64,000 nt of DNA from contig NW_020844150.1 of the NCBI RefSeq assembly GCF_003704095.1, positions 62,001 through 126,000 on the forward strand, given 5' to 3'. Positions 34,632-64,000 of this stretch are shown in pieces (position 1 is the first letter of the stretch; every line of letters starts with the position of its first letter). The position numbers were made by a program, and so were the translations under genes. A model generated the notes under the pieces. The model had not been told where the DNA came from. It saw only the letters and a list, made by a program, of their open reading frames with translations, and searched no databases. Source of the DNA: Pocillopora damicornis. Lineage: Eukaryota.

Positions 34632-37600
34632 ATGCTGATGACACTACTTTGGAGTTTACTCGGATTTGCATGGATGCTCTCGCCATTCATGTGTGTCAAA
34701 GGTATTTCTACTGGACCAAAATTTATTTTTTATTCCAAAATATTTGGATAAGATCATAGACATCTGGACTGAAACTAAATTCATCAGGATATAGCCGTAA
34801 TTAAAGCCGAGAAATCTTAGTTTAAGTATGGGATATAAATCAAATTCTCTGATCTACAAGAAAACGAGGGAAGTTAGGGAAGACGAATGAAAGAGAGAGC
34901 AGGTGAAAGTCGATGTTAGACGAATTGTGATCAAGAGAAAACTGAAATTTTCAGATGTTCAAGATATTATTCTTTTAAAAGCTTTCATCAGTTATGGTAG
35001 CTAAATCTCACTTTCTATAGAAATATGAAAACGCAACACGCACTTGAAGAGCTATTTATATACATCACCTGCAATGCATCTGCACTGAAAGTAGCTACGC
35101 TGAAAAAGCGCTAAAAGTCTACGTTAAAATTGCTAGTTCTTCAAATTTTATTCCACTCGGCTATGCAGAAGACTCAGAAACGAATCCTTTCGATGAAAAC
35201 AAAGAACAGAAAAAAACAAACTTTTCAACGGAACTCTTGCGTTTAAAATTCAAAGCTTTCCAATCGTGCGTAAGCCGAGTCCATACATACTGATGTATGA
35301 ATGCATGATATCACGTATCAAAATGGCACTTAAATTGTTAGAAGTGATTCCATGTGATTTCAAAGGATGTATAGGTCATTTAAAACAATGAACGATCAGA
35401 ATTGCATACCATATGGATCGCAGATAAGGTATATACCGAGAAGATAACTCCGTCGTTGTTTTTTAAAGAGGTGGGGCGTTTAATTGAGTGGTAGGTTCCA
35501 GCTGAGCTCTTTAATCTTTACAAAGTCCACCGGTCTAAAATTTTGCTGATGAAAATCAGCACCAAATTGACTAAACGGAACTTTGTTAATTTGTTTGCTT
35601 ACTGATAATTTTTTACCTAGATGGAAACATATTCATCGATCTCATTTGATCTGTTAGAAATTGGGATCAGTTCAGAAAATAAGTCGGCTCGATTTGAACC
35701 TTTAAGAATTCAGTTACGAAATGTCCTTTGGAGCAAATTTCGTGAAACTCATGATTGGCAATTTCTCTTAAATTGGATTGATGCGAGAATCGGGCCCATA
35801 TGGAAAGTAGGTGGAATGGATAAATTTGCTTGTAAGATCTTCACTTCCTCTTTCTTTTTCAGGGAATCCTTGCGAAGGAACTTACAAGTTTTTGAATGAA
35901 AGTGATCGTTCAAGGCAAATAAATTCAAATAAGTGTGATGCCACTGACTTAGACGGAAAGTGGGGCTGGTTCCGAGTTTCTGGAGAAGCAGGGAATGCCC
36001 TGGCGTCCAGTCTCCCTCCGTCGGGTACTTGTAATGCAGGCCCTCGAGCTTACCTTGTAGATGATCATCCGTCATACGCTGTCGGCGAACTTACTCTTAC
36101 GCTCTGTGTGGCTACAGGAAATAACGATTGCTCTTCTACAAAGAGCCTCGCTGTAATGAACTGCGGCGAATTCTATTTATACGATCTGTTTATGATAAGG
36201 GGCTGCAGCAGCAGAGGATGGCGTTACTGTACAAATGGTATTGGTAAGTTTTGCTGCCCTGTGTACTGGGTGAGATATAATTTAGTTTAGCTAACAAGCT
36301 TTAGTAACGGATTTAAATTTGGTGGTATTTGTGTATTCCTTTCTCATTTTCAATTCTTCCTCTTCGGCTTTGCTGTTTTGCTCACGTTTTTGACTAAGTC
36401 CTCCAGAAAGTTCTTGCTTATGTCATCCCTCTTCCTACGTATGGTTCAAGTTTCACAACGTTTCACGAAGTGTTATTGCTATACACACCACAAAGCTACA
36501 GCTAACTAATACCTTTCTACGGGTTTTAAAGCTTACATTGTGCATTTGAACATGCTGGAATTGCTCCATCTTTAAGGATTCCTGCACCTTACAATGTGTG
36601 GAGTGAAAGGACGCTTGATAAAACGCCTTTTCTTTCTGTTTTGTTTTTGGTTTGTTTTTTCTTTGAGACTTGGAGAATTATTTGTACCGCTGCTTGAACG
36701 ACCTTGTTTCAATCATAAACGGCAAACATAATAACCAATTAATCATAATTTTCTCGCGATTTAAATTGGACTCAATTCATGAACTTTCTTGTAGCCATTT
36801 CTGGTCGACAGGTATTTGCCCTAATGTGAAGCGAAAAGGATTTGTGTCGCTAGGCTCTTAAGATATATCTCTCAGGGAAAAAATGAGCATTTCGCCATAG
36901 GTTTGGGACTTACCTAGTTATGTATCGCTCCCATTGAAATATAGTCCAAATTACGTTAATAAATCACGATAATTGGCACGTTGTTGTATGTCTTTCAGAG
37001 ATGTTTGCAAGAAATTTTCGAGCTTAGGAAATCACATACAGTCACAGCTTAAAAAAGGAAAAAGGAAAAACAAAATCATCTTCTTTTTCAGCGGACGATA
37101 AATGCCCTTGGGATAAATGTCCGAATGGGAAACTGTGCGTTTTGAAGGATAATGGAAAGCAATCTGAATGTGTGGATGGTAAAAGCTATGACTACTTCGA
37201 CTCCAATTAAGTCTATGATGTTAGATATATGTGTTATTAATTGAGCGTGAGGGTACTATGGCTACATTTTTGGTACGAAAGGGGAGATACTGTCAATAAT
37301 TAAAAAATGGTCTTGATCCAACCAGACGTGGTGCACTGATTGGGTAACGATAGAGACCTCTTTCAAATTGAAAGCAACATTTGGGTTTGTCATGTTTATG
37401 ACAGATAGTTCTAAATTTTTGTTAGGTAGTTACATCACAAGTATTTGCTTAAAACTCTCTTATGAGACGTCAAAAATCTAACTTAATATAGAGTAATGTT
37501 GTATGGAATGTTCAAGTTTGTGGATTGTTTCAGCTAGGTATTACATTCACTACACTTGATCTAACCATTATAATGACTAAAAAATGTTTTATTACAGCCC

Positions 37601-39768
37601 CTCTGTCAGGGCCTCAGACTCCGACGATGCCCCCCTCAGAGGATCCTTGCTCACCCAATCCTTGTTGGAATGGTGGTACCTGCAACAACAACTCCAATCC
37701 TTATACCTGCAGTTGTGTGTTTGGATACTCTGGCGCCAACTGTGATATAAACAGTTATGAAGGTAAAAACCTTAAGGTTAATATGCATTCAAAAAAGTTT
37801 AGATAGATAGATAGATAGATAGATAGATATATTTCGCCAGAAAGTATTCAAAATATTTATACATGAATAACCTGATAAAATTTTTCCTGTTAGGTTCTTT
37901 TGAAAACTTAGGGCTTATGACTATCAGCTTTCCCCTCCCCCCTCCCCTCCCCTTAATAAGACTAAAATTACAGGAATCATGTGTGGACTATTATTAACGG
38001 AACATAGTGAATATAAAAAAGACAAATAACGATAATAATAATGATCAGAAACACTGAGCACATTCTAAAAAACAAACGAAAAACACAGAAAATTGTGACT
38101 ACTTGAGGAGAATTGAGAAAGCAAAAGTGCTTTTAGTCTATATCTAAAAAGAGAGACAGTAGGGGCATTTGTTCTCTTAAATCTTATGGCAAACCATCCA
38201 GTATCTTTTACATGTCACTGCTTCTATATGCCATTTATTTATTCATCTATTTATTGAAAGAGTTCTACTTTGATTTGTCATTAGTTCCTATAGTTATGTT
38301 TAATGAGAAGTTCCGATTTATGATTTTGCGCTTTCGAGATTACTTTGGATTTGTTGTTACATCTTGTACAGCTACTTGCGTGGCTTGGCCTGTTTGCTCA
38401 TATTTTAGTATCTGACTTTTTGAAAAATAATTTAGATTGTGCTAGTGCCTTGGGCATGCAGAGTGGCGCAATCCCAAATATCAGTGTAACTGCAAGTTCG
38501 ACTTGGAATTCTTACACCAGTGCAAGCTTGGCCAGGCTGAACCTAACAGGGCAAGGGAACTACAGCGGAGGTTGGGTCGCTGGTTTCTTATCTGTCTTTG
38601 AGCATTTGCAAATTGTTTTCGATACAACCGACACTGTTCTGACAGCTATAGCGACACAAGGGAGAGAAGACGCCGATCAGTGGGTCAAAAAATACTATTT
38701 AAAATACAGGAATTCGAATTGGCGCAACTACAAAGACAAACAAGGAATTACATATACTGTGAGTATGATATATACAAGCTTCTTTGAGCGTTATAACTCT
38801 TTAAAGTGGCACAGATGTGTTAACGCTTCTAGAAAAAGTCATATGTTTTTTGTGAGTCCTCTAGAGGGTTGGAGTAGACTTAAATTTGAGCGAGTAATTT
38901 ATTACTCATTGAAAACGTGACTGTTCAAAGACTTAGCTGCTCGTGCAAAGACTTGATTGATGACTTAAAGAGAATAGTTGATTGCTGATGAAAAAACTTC
39001 AACTTTGAATTGTTTTAGGTTTGTTTGAACTCGGATTGATAGCAGTTAGCAATGAATCTTAATGCAAAGAAAAAGTGAGGTAATTAAAAGCAAGATAATG
39101 TTTAACAGAAAAACTTAAATGTCGAAATTGACATTTGAGGGTAAATTTGAATGCTGATAATACTTGAATGTCGAAAATAGCAGCTGGATTTTGTATATGT
39201 TTAAAAAGGAAACTTGAATGTTAAAAATAACTTGAATTTGACGGGAAAATTAACGGCATATTGAATAGTGCAAATTGGACTTCAATGGCAGAAACAAACA
39301 CAATTCAGAGATTGAGTGAGGCATTTTTTAGCGGTGGACTATAACTTTTTATCGTGTTTCATAGGAATCTTTTATAATTTTCATTTTTTTTATGATCATA
39401 GCTTTATATATTATTACTATCATCAACATCATCTTTACAGTTTACAATCAAAAAAACAAAAAGATTTGTTCCTCCTGGCTTGTTAGCAAAGCTCGCAGAG
39501 CCTAAGTAATTTTCGGGCTTTATTCAGTGTTCACTCATGGAAAAATCACTCACATATCACAGAAGTAGCGGAAGTAGTAGTACCAGAAGCGGCACTAGTA
39601 GTAACAGTAGTAACAGTAGTAATAGTAGTAGTAATAGTAGTAGTAGTAGTAATAGTAGTAGTAGTAGTNNNNNNNNNNNNNNNNNNNNNNNNNNNNNNNN
39701 NNNNNNNNNNNNNNNNNNNNNNNNNNNNNNNNNNNNNNNNNNNNNNNNNNNNNNNNNNNNNNNNNNNN

Positions 39769-39804
<36 letters not shown>

Positions 39805-42800
39805 TAGTAGTTTTGGTAGTAGTAGAAGTANNNNNNNNNNNNNNNNNNNNNNNNNNNNNNNNNNNNNNNNNNNNNNNNNNNNNNNNNNNNNNNNNNNNNN
39901 NNNNNNNNNNNNNNNNNNNNNNNNNNNNNNNNNNNNNNNNNNNNNNNNNNNNNNNNNNNNNNNNNNNNNNNNNNNNNNNNNNNNNNNNNNNNNNNNNNNN
40001 NTAATAGTAGTAGTTGTTGTAGTAGAAGAAGTAGTGAGTGTAATAATAGCAGAAGTAGTAGCAGTAATAGTACTGTTAAGAAGTGCCACTTCATTGTCTT
40101 AAGTGTCAACGTCTTTCACGTATCAATAGTTCTGTTTTCTTTTCTTGTTATATTTTACCAATTTTAGGTGTTCCAAGGAAATACAGATCGTAATGGTATT
40201 GTCAGACACGAATTGAGCCCCATTATCAGAGCATCTAAAATTCGCTTTGAAGTGCTGGCGTGGCACAACAATATTGCAATGAGAGTGGAGTTATATGGTT
40301 GCAGTGGTAATTAAAGATTCAAGCATTTTTTCTATTTGTCTTCATCAAGAACGATCAACAGTTGCTAGTTTCCAATTCAAACCTGAAGCTTTGGATGAAA
40401 GCTACTTGAATGATGCACAACATCTAAACCTTTTTTTAAAATTTATTTTAAGACTAATTATTTAGTATATGATGCACAGCGTGATATGAATTAAAAAAAA
40501 AAAGAAAGACTCACTGTACTAAAGTCACAAACCTATTAACTTACACACTGACTCACCAACTCTCTTACTCACTAAGTCACTGACACACTAACTCACTGAC
40601 TCAGTGACTCACTAAATCACTAACTCGCCGACTCACTGACTCACTAACTAACTGACTCACTGACTCACTAACTAACTGACTCACTGACTCCCTAACTCAC
40701 TGTCTCATCGACCCACTGAATCACCGACCGGCGGACTCTTCAACTAACTTACTGACCGACTGACCCACGGACTCACTGACTTACTGACTTCGACTTACTG
40801 ACCCAGAGAATGATTGAGTGGCTCATAGGCAAATAGAGAGAAAAACCGGCTGATCGATTGACAGAATCTTTGATCATTAGTGACTGACTTACTGAACAAT
40901 TCTAGCTGGCTGACTGACAAGCTGACTATGTACCTGCTCCGCCGTGTTCATCATTGACAATATTTCAAATATTCTTGTGCGTTTGTGATAACAACTTTTA
41001 AAACTGTTGGTGATTGGTATTTTCTTTATTTTCATGGCTTACCACTAACGAATTTTATTCATGTTGTACAGATCCCTGTTCGAGCAATCCATGCCTGAAT
41101 AATGGCACCTGCACCAGTGATCCCAGTGGCTCCTACACTTGTGCATGTCCACCGATGTACACTGATTCTCTGTGTGCCACTTTGGAGGGTAGGGCCGAAG
41201 ATTTAAGGGTACAATGGAGTAGACAGTACAATTTTCTCAACGTCAATTTAACATAAACTTATAGTAGGAAGTAATAGTAACCCTCTGCAGCCCTTTGGTC
41301 TCTTGTTAGATATTTTGATATGTCAAACCGTTTTCTAAGAGTTTTTCACCATTCCTGCCATTGCTAATCCAGGTACCAGGGAGTTGCAATGAATTTTACA
41401 TACCTCATCTTTTATATATATGCATACACCCATACATACATACACACATACATTCATGCATACATATAACAACCACACACAATGTCAACACATTTGAGAG
41501 GGCAAAAGGAAACTAAACATGTCGATATCATGACAACATTGCAAATTGGTTACTTCTTGTTGAGCTCTCGATGGCTTTAGTTCTCTAGGGAAGATTTAAC
41601 GTCGGTATTCTTTCGTGTTTGTATGTTATACAGACTTTTGTTTATCAAACCCCTGTCAAAACGGCGGAAACTGCAGTAATACGCAAGATGGCTTCAAGTG
41701 TACATGCCTCATGTGGTACACCGGGAACGACTGTAGCACAAAACGTAATTACATTTCTTGTTTACCAATATATCGCTTATAGCAATCATCAGTTGCTCTT
41801 TGGCATTACAATGATAAAAGAGTTCTAGCAAGGTTCCTCAATGAATGAACGAACTAACGAGGGGACAGGCAAATGAATAAATTGAACAAACAGGGATAAG
41901 TAGATCAGACAGACAGAATGGCAGGTTGAAAGAACCCCTGCCTCGCAGTGACTGACCGCCAAACAGATCAGCTTATCAAGATTGATAGCCTAGCAGACCG
42001 ATAGACTCTGAGGAAGTGCTAACGCTCCAAACTTTAACTTTGAAACTCTTAACGGCGGCCAATTTGCGTTATCAACTCATTTGATAATACCAAATTACCT
42101 TGTTAAACTGTATGTCAGACTGACACCCCTACTTTCTGACCAAATGACACACTGACCGACTCACACACTAAAAATGTGACAGACGGACAGACTGACAAAG
42201 GAACTGAAGGATAGATCGACTGACTGACAGGTCAACAGACGGTTAGAAATCTCGTACATGAGAATTAATTGTGGGGCACAAAATTTTTGACTTGCTGAGT
42301 AATGAGTGTTTCGTTAAAAAAAAGTCATCACCCGACATTTGACAAAAAAACATTTAAAGATCTTTGTAGCTTTTTATGACGTACTTTTACTCTGATATTC
42401 AATCAGAACATTTTTTTTCTAACAACAGAGTGTCACGGGCCTCTTGGGATGCAAAGTGGTGCAATACGAGACCATCAGCTTATTGCATCCTCGGAAAAAG
42501 ACAATTCTTCTAGCGTTCGCTATGCAAGACTGCACTACGAGAACAAAAAGAAGCCAAAGTCTTGGGTACCTTTACTGGACCATAGAGATCAATGGTTGCA
42601 GGTTAATTTGGGGAACGAGCTGACCTGGGTCACTGGTGTAGCTACCCAAGGAAAACAGGGTAAAAGAGGAGCATGGGTCAAAAATTTCCTGCTGAGGTAC
42701 TGGGGAGCTGGAGTACGAGCGCAGTTATACAAGGGTCATGGGGATATCCACTCCAAGGTGAGTGAAATAGAGAATAATCCATGGGCGAGGGTATAAAATT

Positions 42801-48800: not shown

Positions 48801-51800
48801 AAATAGCGGGAGGTGCATTGGGCGAAACTTCAGCTGAGTTGCTTAACATCACAGCCTCGAATGGTACGTAAGCAAAGTAATTCTCAACTGATGAGTATAA
48901 ATAGCATTGCCGGATTGCGCTGCTTCTTCTGTGATACCCTCCATCATTAGCTTGAGAAGCTAGTACCCTTCGGGCATTTTGCTAGTTTTGGCTCTGAGCT
49001 CACTGCATTGTTCCACTGCGAGACTATATTTTGTTCTACTAAGCCTTCGTAATTTCTTTGGATTTTGACGACTTCCAATCAAGGACGACTCTGATTTGGC
49101 CTATAGTTCTTTTCTCACGCCTTTGGCTTATCGTTGACAAAGATGTAAGATATAAATATTTCTTAAAATGTCTAGAGACGTTAGCTGTAACTATCTCTGA
49201 GAGCTGGCGCTTAATATACCAAAGACTTCTGGAAAAAATGAAAAAAATCCAAAATTTTGCAAAATACGTGTGGCTCATCGATGATTCTTCCTCTTCGCAA
49301 TTGCGTAGTCTTTAATGAAAATGTCTTGTTAGGTTTCAATTTTTAAGCTGCCAAAGTGTCTTATAACTTATGTTAAAAAGGAGACGCTAAAGACCTTCAA
49401 ATAATAAAACGACATAGTATATTTACTTCGGCATTGAGTATGTTCCGGGTCCAAGAGGCATTTTAGCCCAAGCCAGTACATAATGGCAAAGATCAACTCA
49501 AAGAGCTGAGGGCCTAAAACATAATTAGGCCGCGTAGATCATAAGCTGTATGGCCATTATTATGAGAACTGAAGAAATTAAAAACGAAACAGTCTGAACA
49601 ATCGTGAGAGCGGGCTAAAATACATTTTAAACCATCAAAATCTCTGCTCAGCACGCATTACGTGATTTGGATAGCTTTGACAGTATTTTTGTTCCGCAGT
49701 ACCGGGAGCTCCGCTCATCACGGAGGCTACTAGTACCACTTCGACGAGCATTGAGTTGGAATGGACTGCTGTCTTCCAGCCACCTTCTGCTCCACTGCTT
49801 GGCTATGTTATAGTGTACAAAGAAATCAATCGAAAATTCCAACCAGATATTATGAAATCATTACCTCCCAATCCCTCAAAAGCAGTGCTTGAGGATTTAA
49901 AAAAGTTTACTAACTACACCATCCGGGTGTATGCTTTTACAAGCAGCGGAAATGGAGTGTCTAGTAAGGCAGTCTCTGTCAGCACTCAGGAGGACGGTGA
50001 GTCTGAAATATGAGGAGAAAATTTTCAGTTTCTGGGCCAGGCCTCTCGCTAGCACGTCAAATAAATCTATAAAAATCAGCTTAGAGAACTGTGTGTTATA
50101 TCAAAATGACCCCCCTGTTGATCCTGTACATCTGCTTGTACGACATTTTTTGTAAAACTATGCAAATGAATGGTAGGTTACTTACTGTCGGAGTTGAAAG
50201 GGTTGCCAAAGTGAGCTGACTTTGTCTGTGATTTCCTTTTTTTCTCCCACCGTGACAAACACCCCAAATTTCAATTTGATTCGGTAAAAATCGAAGTAAG
50301 AGCCACCATATAGGTGTGGCATTGCTGAAATTAAATTATTCAGGTTTGAGGGATCACAACAGTTGCGCAAGAGAGTAGACCATATACAATTCTTTGTCAA
50401 TTACATGACATTGTCCCTTGCTTTATCTCATTTGTAATGCGGATGAGTTAGGTTTTCTTCAACAAGCTGAATACTTTTCTGTTCTTATAACCTTTCTATA
50501 TTGAACTTAGTACTACTTTTTTCTCTACCCAGTGCCAAGTGAACCGCCTCCCAATAGCGTCATTAAATCTACAAGTGAGAATTCAATCCGTGTGTCCTGG
50601 GAACAAATCAGCCAAGTCCATGTGCATGGAGTACTTCTAGGGTACGAGGTGAGATACGCAATAGATGATGGGTCATCGCCTTGGGTGAGCAAGACACTAG
50701 GTGTAGATGAATATGAAATACATTTAAAAGATCTGGAATATTTCACACCATACAAAGTTGTGGTTTGCGCTAGAACATCAAAAGGCTGTGGCGAAGAGTA
50801 TTCTGACATCGCTTATACGTTTGGAGATGGTGAGTTTATGCACTCTTCTATTCACAGTTAACTCTTTTACTTCCAGAAGTTAAAAAATGTCTCCGTGCAC
50901 CATATTTCCATTTAAAGAGTTCTTAGGGAGAAAAAACAATATATGGGGGATATTGACTGATTTAAAAACAGATTATTAGGGCTGACTTATCAAGAAATAT
51001 ATGGAAGACCGTTATAGAGGATTTTTAAAGGCACAGGGTCAAGGATGGCTTATCAAAAATTAGAAATGACAACCTTCTTTAATATCTTCACAAGTTTTCT
51101 TGATAGAGGATGAAGCAGTCATGAACATAGAAATGTGATGAAGGACGGTTAGCGTAGGCTTTATAGCTGCGCGGAAGAATAACGCGGAAGAATATCGTGA
51201 TGCATAATATTTTTAAGATTTGAAATTGGTTGAGTGCTTCCGAGCCAGCTAGATTTTCAGAAGAAGTCTGGCATATTTCAGCAGTCTTTCGCTAAGGCTC
51301 TGAAATCTTATCAATCAATCTATGGTTTTATCAGGAGCTTTTTTTTCTTAGTACCTAGCAAGCCTCCTCAAAGCGTAGCTGCTGAAAGACTAAAAGCTGC
51401 AGAATTCATTAAAGTCACCTGGAGTCCTGTGCCTTTTGGTTATGTCGGTGGTCTTCTCATGGGGTATTCCATAAACTATCGAAGAATTGTAACAGCTGAA
51501 AAGGAAGTTCTTCCATTGGAGGAGGAAACAGCCACAGCAAAATCAACGGATCTCTTCATATTTTTGAAAGTTCAAACCTACTCAATTTACGAAATTAAAG
51601 TGGCGGCGTTCACTCAAAAGGGCATGGGCCCTTATAGCGATTATGTTTATGGTGGTAAGTTTGGTGCGGGAGTGAAATACCAGGAGAAGAGAAAAATGAT
51701 AGCAGCCTCATTGTAAATTGTTTTCAGAACTTTACTTGAAATTTACTGCCAATTAACTGGCAAGAAGGGGGTTCATAAGCATATTTCAGAGTCTTATGGG

Positions 51801-52107
51801 GGGACGAGGTAAATTATATCTTGATACAAAAAAAATTCTCCAACACCCCCCCCCCCCCCCCCCCCCCCCCTAGGAGATAAGTAATGCAGACCACTTCTTT
51901 ATATGGTGTCGTGATTTGGTTCTCTCGACGAGGGAGAGGTGAGTGGGAGGGTAGGACATTAGCATATTGGTGAGTATTGATTTTTGTCCTTCTGCTAAAA
52001 GAAATGGAATTTGTTTTCTTCTTTTTTTCGTCTTTCCTTCTCTTTTAGAAACCTGTCGCTGTCCGAAAATCCTTTACACTAACTACTGGTCAGCTTCTCC
52101 ATATCTA
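34632..52107 (+). CDS. 5' part of adhesion-ectodomain / GluR0-like K+ channel gene: SP, D8C, 9 EGF, 2 F5/8C, TSP1, SEA, 3 FN3 and the start of the S1 exon (ends at a gap)
   Basis: Exons: 34632-34701 ([23 protein letters not shown]), 35863-36243 (uromodulin/GP2-like D8C: WFRVSGEAG...C.A....L...HP...NCGEFYLY), 37092-37178, 37598-37762 EGF, 38436-38758+40168-40306 F5/8C, 41072-41188 and 41634-41744 EGF, 42429-42757+43466-43604 F5/8C, EGFs 44267-44380, 44465-44590, 45126-45248, 45872-45994, 46294-46416, 46873-46995, TSP1 47514-47684, SEA 47829-47938+48399-48457+48724-48863 (FRPGSV), FN3 49700-49996, 50533-50829, 51352-51654, then 52049-52107 [20 protein letters not shown]. All are phase compatible. 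Confidence 0.85.
39560..40080. repeat. (TAG/TAA)n trinucleotide microsatellite with two assembly gaps (39669-39768, 39831-40001)
   Basis: agtagtagt repeats flank the N runs. The tract lies in the intron that splits the first F5/8C domain. Confidence 0.9.
40540..40930. repeat. (ACTC/ACTG)n degenerate tetranucleotide repeat
   Basis: actcactgactcactaact repeats. Confidence 0.8.
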
Positions 52108-54447
52108 NNNNNNNNNNNNNNNNNNNNNNNNNNNNNNNNNNNNNNNNNNNNNNNNNNNNNNNNNNNNNNNNNNNNNNNNNNNNNNNNNNNNNNNNNNNNN
52201 NNNNNNNCTTCTGCTCCACTGCTTGGCTATGTTATAGTGTACAAAGAAATCAATCAAAAATTCCAACCAGATATTATGAAATCATTACCTCCCAATCCCT
52301 CAGAAGCAGCGCTTGAGGATTTGAAAAAGTTTACTAACTACACCATCCGGGTGTATGCGTTTACAAGCAGCGGAAATGGAGTGTCTAGTAAGGCAGTCTC
52401 TCTCAGCACTCAGGAAGACGGTGAGTTTGAAATATGACGAGAAACCTTTCAGTTTCTGTGCCAGGCCTCCCGCTAGCAGGCCCCGTAAATCTATAAAAAT
52501 CAGCTTAGAGTACTGGGTGTTATATTAAGATGACGCCCTTTTGTTGGTAAGTTTGTAATTATCCTTTACATTTGTTTGTACAACATTTTTTGTATGTATG
52601 TTGTTAAGTATGTGAAGAAATAGCGAGTTAATTACTTTTAGAGCTAAAAGGGTTGCCACGGTGGGCTGAATTTGTTCATGACTTTCTTTTTTTCCCCACC
52701 GTAATAAACACCCTAAGTTTTAAAATTGAAATAAATTTCAAAATCGAAATAAGAGCCACCATGTAGATGTGGCTTTGCCGAAACTAAACCATTCAGGTTG
52801 GACGGATCACAATAGTTGTGCCAGAGAGTAGACCTCATCTCTAATGACGCTGAGTTACGTTTTTCTTTAATCAGCTAAATAAATCTTCTCTACCCAGTAC
52901 CAAGTGAGCCGCCTCCCAATAGCGTCATTAAATCTACAAGCGAGAGTTCAATCCGTGTTTCCTGGGAACAAATCAGCCAAGTCTATGTGCATGGAATACT
53001 TCTCGGCTACGAGGTGAGATACGCAATGGATGATGGGTCATCGCCTTGGGTGAGCAAGACGCTAGGTGTAGACGAATATGAAATAGTTTTAAAAGATCTG
53101 GAATATTTCACACGGTACAAAGTTGTGCTTTGCGCCAGAACATCAAAAGGCTGTGGCAAAGAGCATTCTGACATCGCTTATACGTTTGGTGATGGTGAGT
53201 TTATGCCCTCCTCCATATACAGTTAACTCTTTTATCTCCGGGAGTTACAACCGTCTCCTTGCAGTGTATTCCCACTTAGGGAGTTAATACGAAGAAGGAA
53301 ACATAACTTAAAGGAGAAATTGACTGGTTTAACAACAAATTATAAGGCTAACGTATCAAGAAATATATGGAAGACAGTGTAAAGGTTTTTGAAGGCCTGG
53401 CTTCAAGGATGGCTCATAAAAAATTTATAAATAATCATCCTCTTTAATATCTTCACAAGCTTCGTTAATAGAAGATGAACCAATCATGAACATAAAAATG
53501 TGATGAAGGACGCTTAGTGTAGGCTTCAAATATCATTGATTAATAGCCGCGCGGAAGAATAGCGTGATGCATAATATTTTTAAGACTTGAAATAGGCTGA
53601 GTGCTTCCGAGCCAGCTAGATCTTTAGAAGAAGTCTGGCACATTTCATCAGAGTCTTTCGCTAAGGCTCTGAAATCTTGTCAACCTACGGTTTTGTCAGG
53701 AGCTTTTTTTCTTATCCTCAGTGCCCAGCAAGCCTCCTCAAAGCGTGGCTGCTGAAAGACTAAAAGCTGCAGAATTCATTAAAGTCACCTGGAGTCCTGT
53801 GCCTTTTGGTTATGTGGGTGGTCTTCTCATAGGATATTCTATAAAATATCGAAGAATTGTAACGGCTGAAAAGGAAGTTCTTCCAACGGAGGAGGAAACA
53901 GCCATGGCAAAATCAACGGATCTCTTCATATTTCTGAAAGTTCAAACCTACTCAATTTACGAAATTAAAGTGGCGGCGTTCACTCAAAAGGGCATGGGCC
54001 CGTATAGCGATTATGTTTACGGTGGTAAGTTTGATGCGAAAGAGAAATACCAGGAGAGAAGAATGATAACAGCCTCACTGTAAAATGTTTTTAGAAGATT
54101 ATTTGAAATTTACTGCCAATTAACTGCCACTAAGGGGGTTCATGAGCATATTACAGAGCCTTACTGGGGACAAGGTAAATTATATCGTGACACAAACAAA
54201 ATCCTAAGGCCCCGTCCTCCTGAACATAAGCAATGCAGACCGCTTCCTTATATGATGTCGTGATTTGGTTCTCTCGTTGACGGAGGGGTGAGGGGGAGGT
54301 TAGGACAGTGGGTATTGATTTTTGTCCTTCCGATAAAAAAAAAATGGAATTTTTTTCTTCTTTTTTTCCTCTTTCCCTTCTCTTTTAGAAACATGTCGCT
54401 GTCCGAAAATCCTTTACACTAACTACTGGTCAGCTTCTCCATATCTA
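49784..54447 (+). repeat. Direct duplication of a ~2.3-kb FN3x3 + S1-start block (49784-52107 vs 52208-54447) separated by a 100-N gap
   Basis: Exons are nearly identical and introns are alignable but clearly diverged, with indels. Confidence 0.9.
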
Positions 54448-57400
54448 AGAGTGAACAAACAGGACAGGAAGTTTGGTGGAATATTGAGTAACATTGTCAT
54501 TGACATGATTCAAGTGGCTTGCGACACCTGTCCCGAATACGGTCGTACTATAGTTAAAACTGATTCAAACGGAAAAGGAAAAGATGCCTTCAAGAAAAGT
54601 CTCTTAGGAGTTCTAGCTGACATTGATAATATCCCACAGATAAGTTTCCCGATTTATGGCAACGAATACATCACAAGGTTCATGGGAAGTAATGTCTACA
54701 TAAACCTTGTGGAGTCTCCAGGACTGGCGTTTATTGCTGTTAAGAGGATGCCTGGAACAGCGGCCCGGAACATGATAAGTGCTGTGTTGGATTGCGCTCC
54801 GTTGGTAGTGCTTTCAGGCTGTATGGCATTCATCGCAGGGTTTATCATATGGGTTCTGGTGAGCACCATAAGAACTATTTACTTGTTGCAAAACGTGAAA
54901 TTGGATTTATCTAGTTCAAAACCCCATTAGTATTTGCCACGCTCTAAACAAGCGGCTTTGTACCAAATCAGCATCAAATAGGCGTGAGCTCATTCCCCGT
55001 AGAGGCGTAAATCGGTGCGGTGATGGCAATGTTGTTTAAATTTGTTGGGAATATAAAAAGTTTTTACTTCTCTTTCCCCGAATCGTCCATCGTTTAAGGC
55101 ATAAGCCTTATGAAAATACGCATGAGTTTCTTTCTTTTCTTCTGTCTGAAATCGTGTCTTTTTTCTTATTCGACAATTCCTTGAAATGACATTGTCAAGC
55201 CTCGCTCAGATCAGAAGCGGTAGTTTATTAGAAGTATAAACAATTCTCTTAAACTTTTTTTTCACGTAATAATTTTGAACAGGATATGAAACAAAACCCG
55301 GATGAATTTCCAGCCTCTTTTAGCAAAGGCGTCGGTGAAGGATTCTGGTGGTCATTTATCTCCATGACAACTGTCGGGTGAGAACAGCACGAAAAAATAA
55401 CTATTAGTCACATTACCTTGGTTAAGGACCTGTATCACTTGTTTGTTTCTTTTTTTTTCTTAAATCAGTTATGGAGATCGCTCGCCCCGTTCTGTTCCTG
55501 CTCGTATTTTTGGTATCGCATGGACCCTTACTGGTCTTGTTATTATCTCAGTTCTGATTGGTGCAATATGTTCAGCACTCACGTCTTCTACTATATCGTA
55601 TCCCGTCACCCTCTATGGCACAAAGGTGAGTTATTTCGAAGACTGTCACAACACTTTTCTAACTATTCCTTGCGCTTTGGATGGAATTTCACCAACAAAT
55701 TCGGCAAGTTCAATATCACAAATGGATTTGCATCACAAACGACGCACTGATTAATCAAATAGACTGATTGATTGATTAGCCAACTGACTAATTGATGGAT
55801 TAATTGATCGATCAGTAGATAGAAATTGTAAATGAGTGATTGGTTTTCTTATTGCTTGCTCCTGGACACTCACGAAAGCGTCCTTAATCTCTTGTTTGAT
55901 TTTATATTTAGCAGCAACATGACTATCATTGTATTACTTTGAACGTTTGAGATTTGAGATTTCAGTTTCCTTGGTATGTGGATATATATTTATGTCATTT
56001 CAGGTTGGAGCCATTCAAAACTCTACCGAGCAACGCGTCGGCGTTTTGAAAAACGCAAGAGTAAACGAAGGTAGCATTTGAATTTTCCTTTTTTCTGTGA
56101 TAACTTATCTTCTTCTTTTTTTATTTATTTATTTTTTAACCAAAAGGAAACAATTCATCTGCACGTAGCGTGCGATTTTTCCTTGATATATTAACTTAGA
56201 AAAGAAAAAGTATTTTTTTTTGCTAGACAAGTTCCATCGTCCAAGATTGGAGGTGTCAAAAAATTGAAAAGAATCTTTTGTAAGAAAAAGTTCTCTTTTA
56301 GGGCAGCTGACATGATAAGGATAATTTTCAGCCTCGTGTCATTTACTGCTAACTGTCTAGTGAGTTACTTATTTCTTTTACGGCTTTGTTATTGTGGACG
56401 TCATAGCAAACAATATAATTGATATCATCAATATCAAAATATCAAACACGTTGATCTTTGCGATGCAAGCTTGTGCGGCCGGTTATTTAAACTACCAAAT
56501 CTAAGCAAACTTACTTGGAAATGTAAACTTGCAGCAAAAAAAAGAAAAACAACGCTATTCATAATGCGTGTGGATCAGTAAAGCCGTACGAAAACTTTTT
56601 CATAATCATAGGTCTTAACTTACCTATAACTGAATCATAGATAAGAAATATACCAACTTTGAGGACCTCCGTTCAGCCCTGGAGGATGGAAAAGTTGAAG
56701 GTGCTCTTTTAGACACCTATGTTGCAGCAGAGCACAAAGACGAGCTCTTCAACGACAAAATCTTTGTGAAGGAGATTCTGGACAGACCATTCGGTTATGG
56801 AGTTGTTTTATCAGGAGCGGCAGTGAATGTGGAACAGAGATGTCGCGATTACATCAGCATGCAAATAAGCAAAATATTCCATATCATCCAGAACACAACT
56901 GAGACGCTTGATGTAAGTGTCTCATTTCCTTAAAAAAACGCCTTTGTTTGAGCACATGGAGTATTGCAATAGCTTTTGAGATACTTTTTTCGGTTGGAAA
57001 GGAAAATTTCAATTCATTGTCGTAAAATAATGCAAAGCAATCGCCACGTTCAATCAGAGAAAAGGAGAATATCGTAAGAGCCAATAACAACGCACCGCAA
57101 AACCAATCAAACTGTCTGAAGGGTGGGAAAACGCGAGGGAACAATTTACAAAAGCCGGTTTTATAATTTTTTTTCTTTGAAGCATCGACACCATGTAGTA
57201 CTTTGTCACATAATGTCAGGAACAGTTCTTCAGTGCCTGTTTTTATAAGTACACTTGAATATTTTTGATTGAAAAAGCTTTTTTGTAACTTTTTTTAACC
57301 ATATTTTAAAATCTTTTTGAGATTGGAAAGCGCCAGGATACTGGTGTTAAATAGATATCTTTATCCGGAACGAGTTTTCAAGTACTCTTTGCAACTCTAT

Positions 57401-58707
57401 GTTTCTAAAGTAATAATAAGCTTGCAGTATTGATACAGCCGACATTACCGTCCACCCTCTATCCTTAAAGAAGTTGTATAATCCCAAGCTATTCGTGGCA
57501 CAGTCCATCCACCGAACTAAAAGTATTGTGGCACAGCCTACCCACCAAAGGTACATTGTAGACATCTCTGTGCACTTTGAAAACACTGCTCGTTCTTTTT
57601 TTTTTTTTTTCCGAACTTTAGCCAGCTCCATCAGATGAGGATGTGGAGCAGAGCACGGGCCTGTTTGATGGTTCTTCTGATACGTTCCTTATCGCGATGG
57701 CTTCTTTGATTGGAATGTTAGGAGTTGCTGTCATCGTTGGACTTATTTATCAGTATAAGATATTCGTTCCTCAGGAAAACAAAGGTAAAGTTATTGCTTT
57801 GTTTAAGGGAAACCGAATAGGGTGTCTGGTTTGGTTTATTTCAAATGTGAAAATATAATATATATATAAAGGCAAATGCTTGGGTAGAATTGCGAGATCG
57901 ATTGCTCTTGGTCGCCATTTTGGATTGGTGTGACAGAGATGACGGGTTGGGTAAGAAAAAAAGAAATCTAGCGAAGGAATTCAAAGAAAGACAGACTAGC
58001 ATGTAGAAGGAGATCATGAGGTTTTTTCCCTTCTACTATTTGTCAGCTTATCTTTCCTCTCCCTTTGCGATAGGGACTATTAGCTACCAGAACAACTACC
58101 TCGCGCAAAAACGCGTCCATCGTCAGGAGAATTTGCTCAATTTGACTATTTACTATTCGAGGCTGAGCTTTTACGAGTCATAGTAAAAGTAATCAATAGT
58201 GAATATTTCATCATTTCAGTTGCAAGACTCAAGTCTTCCACATCACATTTTGCTTCGAAAGAAGCCTTTGTTGAAGAAATGAGAGAATTCGTGAACTCGT
58301 TTTATTCTGAGCTGTCCATCAAGATAAATGCGAGCAAAGAGAAGAACAAAGAAGCAATTGAAAAAATCAAAGAAAGAGTTGGAAAGAAACTTGGAGGATC
58401 TGCAAAGAGCTCGAAAATTCCTGGCCTGGTGATAAAAAATCCAGCCTATTCAAGCTCGTCTGCTGAAAACTCCTTCGACTTGAAAAGAAAACTCATCAGG
58501 CCCAGCTCGACAAAAAGCCTTCTCGATCAGACTCAACAATGGAATTCTCCAAATTCTGCAGCACTGAATCGTGTTGAAGTATTGTTGAGGTCAAAAAGCT
58601 CATCCAGTGATCACCGTAAACGTGGTATGGGGTGTGAGACAACTTTGCATAACAGTAAAGCGACGAAAAGTTATACGAAGCCCCGAAAGCTTAATGTTGC
58701 AAAATAG
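52208..58707 (+). CDS. 3' part: 3 FN3 + GluR0-like ligand-binding clamshell (S1/S2) + K+-channel pore (TTVGYGD) + M4 + cytoplasmic tail
   Basis: Exons: 52208-52420, 52898-53194 and 53722-54024 (FN3); 54389-54858 (S1+M1, ...ISFPIYG...ESPGLAFI...LVVLSGCMAFIAGFIIWVL); 55283-55377 (NPDEFP...GVGEGFWWSFISMTTVG); 55469-55625 (YGDRSPRSVPARIFGIAWTLTGLVIISVLIGAICSALT); 56004-56070 (VGAIQNSTE); 56641-56912 (LEDGKVEGALLD...FGYGVVL); 57622-57784 (M4); 58220-58707 (tail, stop). Confidence 0.9.
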
Positions 58708-61140: not shown

Positions 61141-61624
61141 GGAATACCTTATTAATCAACTTATAAAGAAATTGAAATTATCTGCAAAATTTTTAGCGGG
61201 TGAGTATATGAAGAAAATTCATATTTTGTTGTTCTGATCAGTGGTTACGAAGTTAAATTCTACTTCCTGCAGAGTTTTTATAAATGACAGTGAAGGTGAA
61301 TGGTCTCCAAATTGAGTAAGTGACGAAATGTCTCTGTTCAAATGTGTAATTTCCTTATCAAAAAGGAAATGCCAAATAGGAAATATTGTGGAAAAAGATT
61401 GTAACTTTGAAGAAGGAGGTCTGCAATGTAGGCTGGAAAATACAGGGAAAGCAATTCCGAAAAGGATTTTTCACAAAATGTAACATTTTGGGGAATTCGA
61501 AAGAACATTTTTTGGGATGATTTTGCAAATGCATTTGGGCAATATAACCATTATGAACATGTCTAGTTTTAAAGTTCCTCGGTTTACCTTCTCTCTCCCC
61601 GATTCGCAGCACGCAAGACATTAG

Positions 61625-63689: not shown

Positions 63690-64000
63690 CTGTGATTCAG
63701 TTATAGGTTAGTTAAGACTTATGATTATAAACAAGTTTTCTCACGGCTTTACTGAGCAAAACGCATTTCCAATAGCATTTTTTTTTTGCTGCAAGTTTAC
63801 ATTTTCAAGTAAGTTTACTTAGACTTGGTAGTTTAAATAACCAGCGACACAAGCTTGCATATCAAAGATCAACTTGTTTGATATTTTGATATTGATGATA
63901 TCAATTGGGTTGTTAGCCATCACGTCCCCAATAACAAAGTCGGAGAAGAAATGAATGACAACCTAAGCAGTGGCAGTGAATGATAAGAGGCTGAAAATTA

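What the first reader, a model, noticed from the sequence alone, without database searches (positions are those of the whole stretch)
34632..58707. Adhesion-receptor ectodomain fused to a prokaryote-type (GluR0-like) K+-selective ligand-gated ion channel
Seen: phase-compatible exons give signal peptide-D8C-EGF-F5/8C-2EGF-F5/8C-6EGF-TSP1-SEA-3FN3, followed by S1-M1-pore(TTVGYGD)-M3-S2-M4-tail (~1,900 aa). The FN3-to-S1 junction appears independently on both sides of the 52108-52207 gap, so the fusion is not created by the gap. Established: a split periplasmic-binding-protein clamshell around an inverted 2TM K+ pore is the architecture of cyanobacterial GluR0. Canonical animal iGluRs have an LIVBP-like N-terminal domain and lack the TVGYG filter. 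Inference: here a ~1,300-aa cell/matrix-adhesion array replaces the N-terminal domain, giving an 'adhesion ion channel' that could convert contact, glycan/matrix binding or tension into K+ flux. I do not know of a characterised protein with this architecture.
Basis: partly seen in the sequence, partly recalled or inferred. Interest (0 to 1): 0.93.

Follow-up and report, generated by a model that had tools for sequence, protein, structure and literature searches.

The report
Coral adhesion-ectodomain potassium-filter glutamate-receptor-like channel
A coral gene joins a long cell-adhesion-type outer region to a glutamate-receptor-shaped ion channel that keeps a potassium-channel filter; it belongs to a large family found across Cnidaria that I could not find described in the literature.

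Summary
Pfam, exon by exon, finds 9 EGF, 2 split F5/8C, 1 TSP1 and 3 FN3. SEA is supported through orthologues. D8C is not confirmed.

RNA contigs from three independent coral transcriptome studies splice the last FN3 exon to the S1 exon (54024>54389). They also join every channel exon, including TTVG|YGD across a 91-base intron.

A homologue's AlphaFold model matches whole iGluR LBD-TMD structures. Its S1+S2 clamshell matches the GluR0 ligand-binding core at Z 20.

Gene models with the same layout exist in Stylophora, Oculina, Montipora, Acropora, Nematostella, Exaiptasia, Actinia, Hydractinia and Clytia. Their outer modules vary widely. This genome holds 21 full-length S1-M1 exons.

Caveat: the letters on the two sides of the 52108-52207 gap are not continuous. 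The gap separates two paralogous FN3-to-S1 blocks (exons 93-98% identical, introns 82-87%). One 1,900-aa reading frame across it is therefore unproven, although a 1,388-aa Oculina model is collinear from the signal peptide to the tail.

K+ selectivity, the ligand and any adhesion or tension gating are inferences.

The scan met this family before on other DNA of this genome (s1-762903). My literature searches found no description of it.

The parts
34632..34701 (+). Exon 1: start codon and signal peptide (predicted)
   Evidence: Hydrophobic 19-mer, KD 1.62. Donor in phase 1. The Oculina orthologue P0194 starts the same way and continues with GNPCE, as exon 2 does.
35863..36243 (+). Exon 2: 8-cysteine, D8C-like domain (family assignment unconfirmed)
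   Evidence: No Pfam hit at E<=1. 48% identical to P0194 residues 19-106. WFRVSG motif aligns with P0191.
37092..37178 (+).
   Evidence: Open frame with a phase-compatible acceptor and donor. No RNA check was made.
37640..37762 (+). EGF 1
   Evidence: PF00008, E 4e-6. Phase 1-1 splice sites.
38409..40306 (+). F5/8C domain 1 in two exons (38409-38758 and 40168-40306). The intron between them holds the gaps 39669-39768 and 39831-40001.
   Evidence: PF00754 profile 1-90 on the first exon and 86-127 on the second. Donor and acceptor both phase 0.
41072..41744 (+). EGF 2 (41072-41188) and EGF 3 (about 41633-41744)
   Evidence: PF00008, E 1e-8 and 2e-6.
42429..43604 (+). F5/8C domain 2 in two exons (42429-42757 and 43466-43604)
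   Evidence: PF00754 profile 3-82 and 86-127. Phase 0 junction.
44267..46995 (+). EGF 4-9, one exon each: 44267-44380, 44465-44590, 45126-45248, 45872-45994, 46294-46416, about 46872-46995
   Evidence: PF00008 on each exon. Phase 1-1.
47514..47685 (+). TSP1 repeat (3' end approximate)
   Evidence: PF00090, E 2e-11.
47829..48863 (+). SEA-like domain in three exons (about 47829-47938, about 48399-48460, 48724-48863). The spliced reading gives ..LEF-R-PG|SVISSF.., a G|S motif of the SEA self-cleavage type.
   Evidence: No Pfam hit on single exons. Collinear with the SEA of P0003 and P0194. Middle exon and phase-2 junction read.
49700..51654 (+). FN3 x3, copy 1 (49700-49996, 50533-50829, 51352-51654)
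   Evidence: PF00041, E 9e-14, 3e-11 and 1e-6. Phase 1-1.
52049..52107 (+). First 59 bases of an S1 exon (copy 1), cut off by the gap
   Evidence: 98% identical to 54389-54447. Acceptor intact.
52108..52207 (.). Assembly gap. The sequence on its two sides is not continuous.
   Evidence: Left side ends in an S1 exon and right side starts inside an FN3-1 exon. A similar 100-N gap in the inverted paralogue hides the FN3 and S1 exons.
52208..54024 (+). FN3 x3, copy 2 (..52420, 52898-53194, 53722-54024), transcribed and spliced
   Evidence: PF00041. GT..AG joints in RNA contigs of X1, X6 and X12. One 836-nt contig spans all three exons plus S1 (boundaries).
54389..54858 (+). S1 half of the clamshell plus M1
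   Evidence: Joint 54024>54389 in three studies. AF2 model pLDDT 88. Residues 1-111 align with the S1 part of binding proteins and iGluR LBDs, Z 5.5-7.1.
55283..55377 (+). Pore helix and first half of the filter (..SMTTVG)
   Evidence: RNA joints. Weak Ion_trans_2 hit.
55469..55625 (+). Second half of the filter (YGD) and M3. No SYTANLAAF motif.
   Evidence: RNA joint 55377>55469. Ion_trans_2 22.4 bits, Lig_chan 18.8 bits.
56004..56912 (+). S2 half of the clamshell in two exons (56004-56070 and 56641-56912), with the family-invariant Asp in ..ALLDTY..
   Evidence: RNA joints. Invariant D/Y columns in A1. S2 is part of the Z 20 match in the homologue.
57622..57784 (+). M4 helix
   Evidence: KD 2.59. 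RNA joint 56912>57622, and a loose end at 57784 that reads the start of the tail exon.
58220..58707 (+). Cytoplasmic tail to the stop codon. It is a long helix in the homologue model.
   Evidence: Loose-end letters in X1, X6 and X12 match 58220 onward. Helices 429-518 in P0129.
61322..64000 (-). 3' end (tail, M4, S2) of an inverted paralogue. It continues beyond the window with pore, [gap], SEA, TSP1 and EGF exons.
   Evidence: 85-86% nucleotide identity to 56322-59020. Exon order read.

Best explanation
SHOWN: 34.6-58.7 kb holds a real, spliced, transcribed coral gene, or two tandem paralogues cut by the 52.1 kb gap. The product is a type-I membrane protein with three parts in order.
1. A signal peptide and a modular adhesion/lectin-type ectodomain: a Cys-rich D8C-like domain, 9 EGF, 2 F5/8C and TSP1.
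2. A membrane-proximal SEA plus 3 FN3 stalk.
3. An iGluR-fold channel core, S1-M1-pore loop-M3-S2-M4, followed by a helical tail.

The core has a compact GluR0-like clamshell and a TTVGYGD potassium-channel filter. It is one member of a large family seen only in Cnidaria so far. In that family the core and the FN3 stalk are constant and the outer modules vary.

INFERRED: four subunits form an inverted K+-selective pore, as in GluR0. Closure of the clamshell on a still unknown small ligand pulls M3 open, K+ leaves the cell and the cell hyperpolarises. The variable ectodomain places or tunes the channel by binding matrix, glycans or other cells. It may also pass on force through the SEA/FN3 stalk.
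For: Transcription and splicing:
- GT..AG joints 52420>52898, 53194>53722, 54024>54389, 54858>55283, 55377>55469, 55625>56004, 56070>56641 and 56912>57622 appear in RNA contigs of three studies.
- One contig spans FN3-1' to S1.

Fold:
- The P0129 model has pLDDT 78.
- The best 500 Foldseek hits counted (E <= 0.001) are led entirely by iGluR LBD-TMD chains; every listed row is one, at E ~1e-10 over about 450 columns.
- S1+S2 match the GluR0 cores 2pyy (Z 20.0) and 1ii5 (Z 19.8).
- The window's own S1 exon aligns in register with the S1 part of such domains.

Topology: no transmembrane segment lies between the signal peptide and M1.

Filter: T[VL]GYGD is present in 25 of 29 long public models.

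Family:
- 272 library hits.
- Gene models from nine cnidarian genera carry fn3/TSP_1/SEA/F5_F8C/MAM/LamG/pentraxin together with Ion_trans_2.
- Oculina P0194 is collinear with the window from the signal peptide to the tail.
- This genome has 21 full-length S1-M1 exons.
- ESM Atlas leads place the family clusters in Cnidaria and name cyanobacterial GluR0-type channels as the nearest structural relatives.
Against: - The 52108-52207 gap breaks continuity, so the 5' ectodomain and the 3' channel may belong to two paralogues.
- No RNA was laid on the 34.6-52.1 kb exons.
- Pfam and a PDB profile search see no binding-protein signal in S1 or S2. The strong fold evidence comes from a homologue only 26% identical in S1.
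- No Arg equivalent to the iGluR alpha-carboxylate anchor is conserved in 127 S1 segments, so an amino-acid ligand is doubtful.
Confidence: 0.8

Rival explanations
1. Two tandem paralogous genes, A and B, each with the full ectodomain-plus-channel layout, are truncated and stitched together by the 52.1 kb gap. Exons at 34.6-52.1 kb belong to A, whose channel is hidden. Exons at 52.2-58.7 kb belong to B, whose ectodomain is hidden. This concerns the gene model, not the nature of the protein.
For: - The two blocks are diverged but both intact: exons 93-98% identical, introns 82-87%.
- That is about the same divergence as the inverted paralogue.
- A 100-N gap in that paralogue hides several kb of exons.
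- Splicing from a copy-1 S1-M1 exon into FN3-1' would break the frame (phase 0 into phase 1).
Against: - The orthologous Oculina and Stylophora models have one set of 3 FN3. That fits one gene plus a redundant contig equally well.
- No second near-identical full S1 exon is found elsewhere in the assembly.
Confidence: 0.5
2. The ectodomain, not a small ligand, gates the channel. Adhesion or tension on the outer modules, perhaps after SEA self-cleavage, is passed through the FN3 stalk to the clamshell. This would make an adhesion- or force-gated K+ channel.
For: - A constant SEA-FN3 stalk sits next to S1 and the outer modules are hypervariable.
- A G|S motif of the SEA cleavage type is present.
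- The canonical ligand-anchoring Arg is not conserved.
Against: - The clamshell is complete and well conserved, including an invariant S2 Asp. That suggests a pocket still under selection.
- In known iGluRs the outer domain modulates and anchors rather than gates (established knowledge).
- No experiment bears on this.
Confidence: 0.2
3. The protein is mainly an adhesion or recognition receptor, and the channel core is a non-conducting or non-selective membrane anchor.
For: - Pore-deleted copies exist nearby, and one such form appears in RNA.
- One model has a degenerate filter (SQGFGD, P0053) and two have no filter motif.
Against: - The pore-deleted copies carry lost splice sites, a stop or a frameshift, so they are decaying.
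- The filter, pore-helix glycines and M3 are conserved across Anthozoa and Hydrozoa.
Confidence: 0.1
4. The fusion is an artefact: a mis-joined assembly, read-through of neighbouring genes, or bacterial contamination.
For: - The assembly is fragmented here, with 3 gaps in the finding and 8 more in the next 20 kb.
Against: - The FN3-3 to S1 intron is only 364 bases, and the junction is spliced in polyA/oligo-dT RNA of three studies.
- The same junction appears in independent gene models of nine genera.
- The core is split by seven spliceosomal introns.
Confidence: 0.02

Closest known systems
GluR0 (cyanobacterial K+-selective glutamate receptor; LBD structures 1ii5, 2pyy)
   Same: - Clamshell split around a pore with a TxVGYG filter.
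- Compact ligand-binding core of about 215 residues, which is the best structural match (Z 20.0 and 19.8).
- No LIVBP-type amino-terminal domain.
   Different: - The coral protein has an M4 helix and a long cytoplasmic tail.
- It has a signal peptide and about 1,300 aa of EGF/F5-8C/TSP1/SEA/FN3 modules.
- Its gene has introns.
- Sequence similarity of S1/S2 is undetectable by HMMER.
- The ligand-anchoring Arg is not conserved.
AvGluR1 (rotifer iGluR with a TXVGYG motif; PMC3483616)
   Same: - An animal protein of iGluR fold that keeps the K+ channel signature.
- Its LBD (4io2) appears among the weak matches of the window's S1 model.
   Different: - By my recollection, not checked here, AvGluR1 has the usual LIVBP-type amino-terminal domain and binds amino acids.
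- The coral family has adhesion modules instead, lacks SYTANLAAF and forms a large gene family.
Animal iGluRs (AMPA, kainate, delta, NMDA, epsilon)
   Same: - S1-M1-P-M3-S2-M4 order.
- Whole LBD-TMD fold match over about 450 columns.
- Outer domains that can mediate adhesion, as in delta receptors with cerebellin and neurexin (established knowledge).
   Different: - K+ filter instead of the Q/R/N pore.
- No SYTANLAAF gate motif. The 2018 survey discarded sequences with fewer than 4 of its residues (PMC6307864).
- Lig_chan is below the Pfam cut-off on the window's exons.
- No LIVBP domain.
Adhesion GPCRs and receptor-type molecules with SEA/FN3 stalks (analogy only)
   Same: A variable adhesion-module array, then a juxtamembrane domain of self-cleaving type, then a signalling membrane core. 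The family has diversified by exon shuffling of phase 1-1 modules.
   Different: - The membrane core is an ion channel, not a 7TM receptor or phosphatase.
- SEA cleavage and force sensing are untested here.
Two-TM and K2P potassium channels (Pfam Ion_trans_2)
   Same: - The pore helix, filter and inner helix are recognisably K+-channel-like.
- The best PDB sequence hits of P0129 are K2P, NaK, MthK and SK.
- Ion_trans_2 scores 37-52 bits in most homologues (27.7 in P0053), all above the 22.5 cut-off.
   Different: - The pore must be inverted in the membrane, because the N-terminus and S1 are extracellular.
- The pore is inserted into a binding-protein clamshell.

Membership tests
iGluR superfamily (clamshell-gated tetrameric channels) | Order S1-M1-re-entrant pore loop-M3-S2, with S1 and S2 forming one class-II binding-protein clamshell | tested here: met
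   - Homologue P0129: the best 500 Foldseek hits are led entirely by iGluR LBD-TMD chains.
- S1+S2 match GluR0 LBDs at Z 19.8-20.0.
- The window's S1 exon aligns in register at Z 5.5-7.1.
- The order of the window's exons is confirmed by RNA joints.
iGluR superfamily | Pfam Lig_chan (PF00060) above the gathering score | tested here: inconclusive
   - Window exon: 18.8 bits against a cut-off of 30.8. The domain is split over exons and could not be joined.
- Homologues: 20.5 to 38.6 bits. P0019, P0023, P0088 and P0197 pass.
Eukaryotic iGluRs (AKDF, NMDA, epsilon) | SYTANLAAF gate motif in M3 | tested here: not met
   The window's M3 reads ..SVLIGAICSALTS... The family consensus is SILxGxxTxxLT. 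Only the first Ser fits.
Eukaryotic iGluRs | LIVBP-type amino-terminal domain (ANF_receptor) | tested here: not met
   No ANF_receptor hit on any exon or homologue. EGF, F5/8C, TSP1, SEA and FN3 are found instead.
Eukaryotic iGluRs | M4 helix after S2 | tested here: met
   Hydrophobic exon 57622-57784, KD 2.59. Helix 391-423 in the P0129 model, included in the iGluR alignments.
GluR0-type (prokaryotic K+-selective iGluR) | K+ channel signature TxVGYG in the pore loop | tested here: met
   TTVG|YGD across the 55378-55468 intron, joined in RNA. Conserved in 25 of 29 long models.
GluR0-type | Minimal architecture: no M4 and no extra extracellular domains (from my recollection of GluR0, not checked here) | tested here: not met
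   M4, a tail and an ectodomain of about 1,300 aa are present.
GluR0-type / amino-acid-binding iGluR | Ligand triad: S1 Arg for the alpha-carboxylate and S2 Asp/Glu for the alpha-amino group | tested here: inconclusive
   - No Arg is conserved in 127 S1 segments. Only a Lys/Arg at exon position 68 reaches 77%.
- An invariant Asp sits in the S2 motif LxDAY.
- Equating that Asp with GluA2 E705 rests on my memory of iGluR motifs, not on a residue-level structural alignment.
GluR0-type | K+-selective, ligand-gated current | not testable with these tools
   Needs electrophysiology.
K+ channel pore (Pfam Ion_trans_2) | PF07885 above the gathering score of 22.5 | tested here: met
   - Homologues score 27.7-52 bits, all above the cut-off.
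- The window's half-pore exons score 16.4 and 22.4 bits separately.
SEA domain (self-cleaving type) | SEA fold with a G|S[VI] cleavage motif | tested here: inconclusive
   - No Pfam hit on single window exons.
- Orthologues score 27.0 bits (P0194), 26.9 (P0019) and 32.8 (P0191) against a cut-off of 26.4.
- The motif ..FRPG|SVISSF.. is read across a splice junction.
- Cleavage was not tested.
D8C (uromodulin-type) | Pfam D8C_UMOD (PF23283) | tested here: not met
   No hit at E<=1 on 35811-36287. Only P0192 shows a sub-threshold hit, 19.7 bits against 27. The eight Cys and the W[FY]R motif are seen by eye only.

The most novel reading that the evidence does not exclude
These proteins may be a new functional class, 'adhesion ion channels'. 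Engagement or tension of a hypervariable adhesion/lectin ectodomain would be relayed by a self-cleaving SEA and FN3 stalk to a GluR0-like clamshell. That would directly gate a K+ pore. Cnidarian cells would then have a fast electrical read-out of contact with prey, symbionts, microbes, neighbours or matrix. The family may also preserve an intermediate between bacterial GluR0 and eukaryotic iGluRs (K+ filter plus M4).
Probability: 0.2. Interest if true: 0.95.

Novelty: new variant of a known kind. Interest (0 to 1): 0.8.

Why it matters
- It would put K+-filter, GluR0-like channels into animals as a large, expressed and diversifying gene family.
- It gives a testable intermediate for the long-standing model that iGluRs arose from a binding protein plus an inverted K+ channel.
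- It shows an ion channel built on the same "variable adhesion array + stalk + membrane core" plan as adhesion GPCRs.
- iGluR surveys that filter on SYTANLAAF would exclude such sequences by design (PMC6307864). Automatic annotation calls them contactin-, sidekick- or PTPRQ-like, so they are easy to miss.
- Members exist in Nematostella and Hydractinia, which to my knowledge are genetically tractable, so function looks testable.

Tried and rejected
**No signal**
- Pfam on S1, S2, M4 and tail exons: no binding-protein hit.
- hmmsearch of a 50-sequence S1-M1 profile against PDB: nothing below E 0.049, and no binding protein or iGluR.
- phmmer of P0129 against PDB: the 60 best of 188 matches shown are all K+ channels.
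- Foldseek on the window's S1-M1 model alone: best E 0.27, although the list is made of binding proteins and iGluR LBDs.

**Searches that added nothing**
- The search for homologous proteins with the P0129 core returned only P0129 itself, because of the word-sharing limit.
- A regex scan of paralogue loci for FN3 ends and filters was too narrow to be useful.
- D8C by Pfam and by BLASTP to P0191: only a 15-residue motif.

**Not run**
All window searches were exon by exon, by reference.

**Literature**
- Searches found no description of the family.
- I also read two iGluR phylogeny papers.

**Rejected readings**
- Bacterial contamination or a fusion artefact: introns, polyA RNA and nine genera argue against it.
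- A true 6-FN3 gene: it would need skipping of an out-of-phase S1 exon.
- Allelic haplotigs as the only source of the duplicate block: 13-17% intron divergence is high for alleles.

Full report
**What the window is.** The window is G000:C785:62001-126000, from a 234-Mb assembly in 4,393 contigs. GC content is 38%. RNA and DNA runs that hold the stretch are labelled coral or marine metagenome. The closest named homologues are from the corals Stylophora and Oculina. From memory the assembly statistics fit Pocillopora damicornis. I did not verify that.

**Observation: the ectodomain.** I searched stop-free pieces of the + strand one by one against Pfam.
- The three FN3 exons occur a second time at 52.2-54.0 kb.
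- Almost all ectodomain exons are phase 1-1 with canonical sites. The two F5/8C domains are split by phase-0 introns.
- The putative D8C exon (35863-36243) has eight cysteines and a WFRVSG motif but no Pfam hit.
- The SEA exons give no Pfam hit on their own. They are collinear with the SEA of the Stylophora and Oculina orthologues, which passes the Pfam cut-off in Oculina.
- A middle SEA exon near 48.4 kb makes the spliced reading ..LEF-R-PG|SVISSF...

**The channel exons and their RNA support.** Seven exons (54389-54858, 55283-55377, 55469-55625, 56004-56070, 56641-56912, 57622-57784, 58220-58707) are in phase with canonical sites. I laid Logan contigs of four RNA runs from four studies on 52300-58200.
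- Three polyA, oligo-dT or cDNA runs (X1, X6, X12) show GT..AG joints at every predicted junction.
- These include 54024>54389, which joins the last FN3 exon to S1, and 55377>55469, which makes TTVG|YGD.
- One 836-nt contig runs from FN3-1' through FN3-2' and FN3-3' into S1.
- The loose end at 57784 reads the first bases of the tail exon.
- The random-primed run X5 covers introns and shows no joints.

The fusion is transcribed.

**The gaps.** The two gaps at 39.7-40.0 kb lie in an intron between complementary halves of one F5/8C domain (Pfam profile 1-90 and 86-127), and both splice sites are phase 0.

The gap at 52108-52207 is different. The left side ends 59 bases into an S1 exon. The right side begins inside an FN3-1 exon. 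The two FN3-to-S1 blocks are 93-98% identical in exons but only 82-87% in introns. Both are therefore intact, selected copies, and they are about as diverged as the inverted paralogue at 61.3-64.0 kb.

Beyond the window, that paralogue reads tail, M4, S2, pore, [100-N gap], SEA, TSP1, EGFs on the minus strand. So a nominal 100-N gap in this assembly can hide several kb, including the FN3 and S1 exons.

I therefore cannot say whether the 5' ectodomain and the 3' channel are one gene with a redundant contig scaffolded in, or two tandem paralogues. A real 6-FN3 gene is unlikely, because a copy-1 S1-M1 exon (ending in phase 0) cannot splice in frame into an FN3 exon (phase 1).

**Why the architecture stands either way.**
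- The paralogue C has the same ectodomain-plus-channel content.
- The FN3-3 to S1 intron is only 364 bases.
- The 1,388-aa Oculina patagonica model P0194 is collinear with the window from the signal peptide and the GNPCE.. Cys-rich domain, through EGF, TSP1, SEA and three FN3, to S1, pore, S2, M4 and tail.

**Fold.** Sequence methods see only the pore.
- Ion_trans_2 and a weak Lig_chan hit fall on the pore exons.
- K2P, NaK and MthK are the best PDB sequence matches of the homologue P0129.
- A 50-sequence S1-M1 profile finds nothing in PDB.

Structure comparison does see the clamshell.
- AlphaFold2 of the 519-aa Hydractinia homologue P0129 with a 15-sequence alignment gives pLDDT 78.
- Foldseek's best 500 PDB matches (the number counted, all at E <= 0.001) are led entirely by AMPA, NMDA and delta receptor LBD-TMD chains, at E ~1e-10 over about 450 columns.
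- VIA-align puts S1+S2 (residues 24-374, across the membrane part) on the GluR0 ligand-binding cores 2pyy (Z 20.0, rmsd 2.7 A, 203 of 217 residues) and 1ii5 (Z 19.8). These are tied with bacterial Gln/Arg/His-binding proteins at Z 18-20.
- The window's own S1-M1 exon, folded with 50 family sequences (pLDDT 88), aligns in the right register with the S1 portion of such proteins and of GluA2, GluD and GluK LBDs. The Z of 5.5-7.1 (rmsd 1.8-2.9 A, 77-96 residues) is modest on its own. All 50 top rows are of that kind.
- ESM Atlas leads agree. The family clusters are cnidarian and the nearest structural neighbours are cyanobacterial SBP_bac_3+Lig_chan+Ion_trans_2 proteins.

**Topology.** Only the signal peptide, M1, M3 and M4 are hydrophobic enough for the membrane. 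With disulfide-rich extracellular modules running directly into S1, the pore loop must enter from the cytoplasmic side. That is the inverted arrangement of iGluRs and GluR0.

**Family.**
- The S1-M1 exon finds 272 proteins among 1.84 billion representatives.
- All named long ones are cnidarian: Stylophora, Nematostella, Hydractinia, Clytia, Montipora, Exaiptasia, Actinia, Oculina and Acropora.
- Their Pfam content is a constant FN3 run next to the core, often with TSP1 and SEA. Beyond that come very different outer modules: pentraxin/LamG, F5/8C, MAM, TLDc, fibrinogen C, EGF_CA and TNF. Proteins reach up to 4,700 aa.
- The filter is T[VL]GYGD in 25 of 29 long models.
- The core begins with an almost invariant E-T-C-x-C-P motif at a phase-1 exon border.
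- This genome has 21 full-length open S1-M1 exons and further fragments.

**Ligand.**
- Across 127 S1 segments there are four conserved cysteines (TCxC...CxxC) and the motifs SFPxxG and PLVxSPGxAFI. There is no conserved Arg that could play the role of the iGluR alpha-carboxylate anchor.
- S2 has an invariant Asp in LxDAY. From my memory of iGluR motifs it sits where the alpha-amino-binding acidic residue lies. I could not check this residue by residue.
- The clamshell therefore looks functional, but its ligand need not be an alpha-amino acid.

**Mechanism.**
- Shown: the architecture, its transcription, the fold and the conservation.
- Inferred from GluR0 and iGluR knowledge: a tetramer with an inverted K+-selective pore, gated by clamshell closure. 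This gives K+ efflux and hyperpolarisation.
- The variable ectodomain most likely localises or modulates the channel through matrix, glycan or cell contacts.
- Direct gating by adhesion or tension through the SEA/FN3 stalk is the more novel alternative. I give it about 0.2.

**Known or new.**
- GluR0 and AvGluR1 carry the TXVGYG motif (PMC3483616). GluR0 is cited as bearing a K+-channel-like filter (PMC12226733).
- The 2018 metazoan iGluR survey discarded sequences with fewer than four SYTANLAAF residues (PMC6307864). That rule would exclude this family.
- The 2025 eukaryote-wide phylogeny I read does not mention it.
- Seven literature searches, including UniProt and locus identifiers, found nothing. 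The library is incomplete, so this is absence of evidence only.
- The sequences are public but named after their FN3 repeats.
- An earlier follow-up in this scan reached the same view for another locus of this genome (s1-762903). What this window adds is the adhesion ectodomain and its splice link to the core.

**Limits.**
- The strong fold evidence is from a homologue.
- The upstream exons have no RNA check.

Noticed in passing
G000:C785:135100-141600 (L013/L014; window-equivalent 73.1-79.6 kb): There are three further partial copies: D on + at 73.1-74.3 kb, F on + at 76.7-77.4 kb and E on - at 79.6-77.5 kb. In each, the first ~22 codons of the S1 exon are fused directly to the donor that normally follows the M3 exon. 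This deletes the rest of S1, M1, the pore and M3. D and E have lost the acceptor AG, D has also lost the donor GT, F has an in-frame TGA, and the junction shifts the frame. They look like pore-deleted pseudogenes descended from one deletion event.
   Followed up: partly
window 54455>56014 (RNA run X6): One RNA contig (depth 6) joins S1 codon ~22 to the S2a exon, with 12 other letters between. This is the same junction as in the pore-deleted genomic copies, so at least one such copy seems to be transcribed and spliced.
   Followed up: partly
L013 (window-equivalent 64000-72300, minus strand): The inverted paralogue continues as S2a, pore exon, a 100-N gap (64899-64998), SEA, TSP1 (94.5% aa identity) and at least seven EGF exons. 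The gap replaces the pore-1, S1-M1 and FN3 exons.
   Followed up: yes
window 55529-55589, 56678-56882, 57683-57753: RNA contigs come in two versions that differ at 7-11% of exon positions, in several runs. This suggests co-expressed close paralogues or divergent alleles or species in the samples.
   Followed up: no
window 39487-40100: The two gaps at 39.7-40.0 kb are flanked by a trinucleotide microsatellite. It reads as runs of V or S in translation, which probably explains why the assembly broke there.
   Followed up: no
window 37092-37178: A small phase 1-1 exon coding a Cys-rich stretch (..[12 protein letters not shown]..) lies between the D8C-like exon and the first EGF.
   Followed up: no
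Public records for P0003, P0020, P0042, P0065, P0189: Automatic names (contactin-3-like, PTPRQ, sidekick-1/2) come from the FN3 repeats and hide the channel core. The Stylophora model P0003 also skips part of M3 and lacks M4.
   Followed up: partly
window 54391-54540 and family alignment A2: Four near-invariant cysteines (TCxC near the start of S1 and CxxC about 40 residues later) are a family hallmark absent from classical iGluR S1. Whether they form two disulfides or a metal site is unknown.
   Followed up: no
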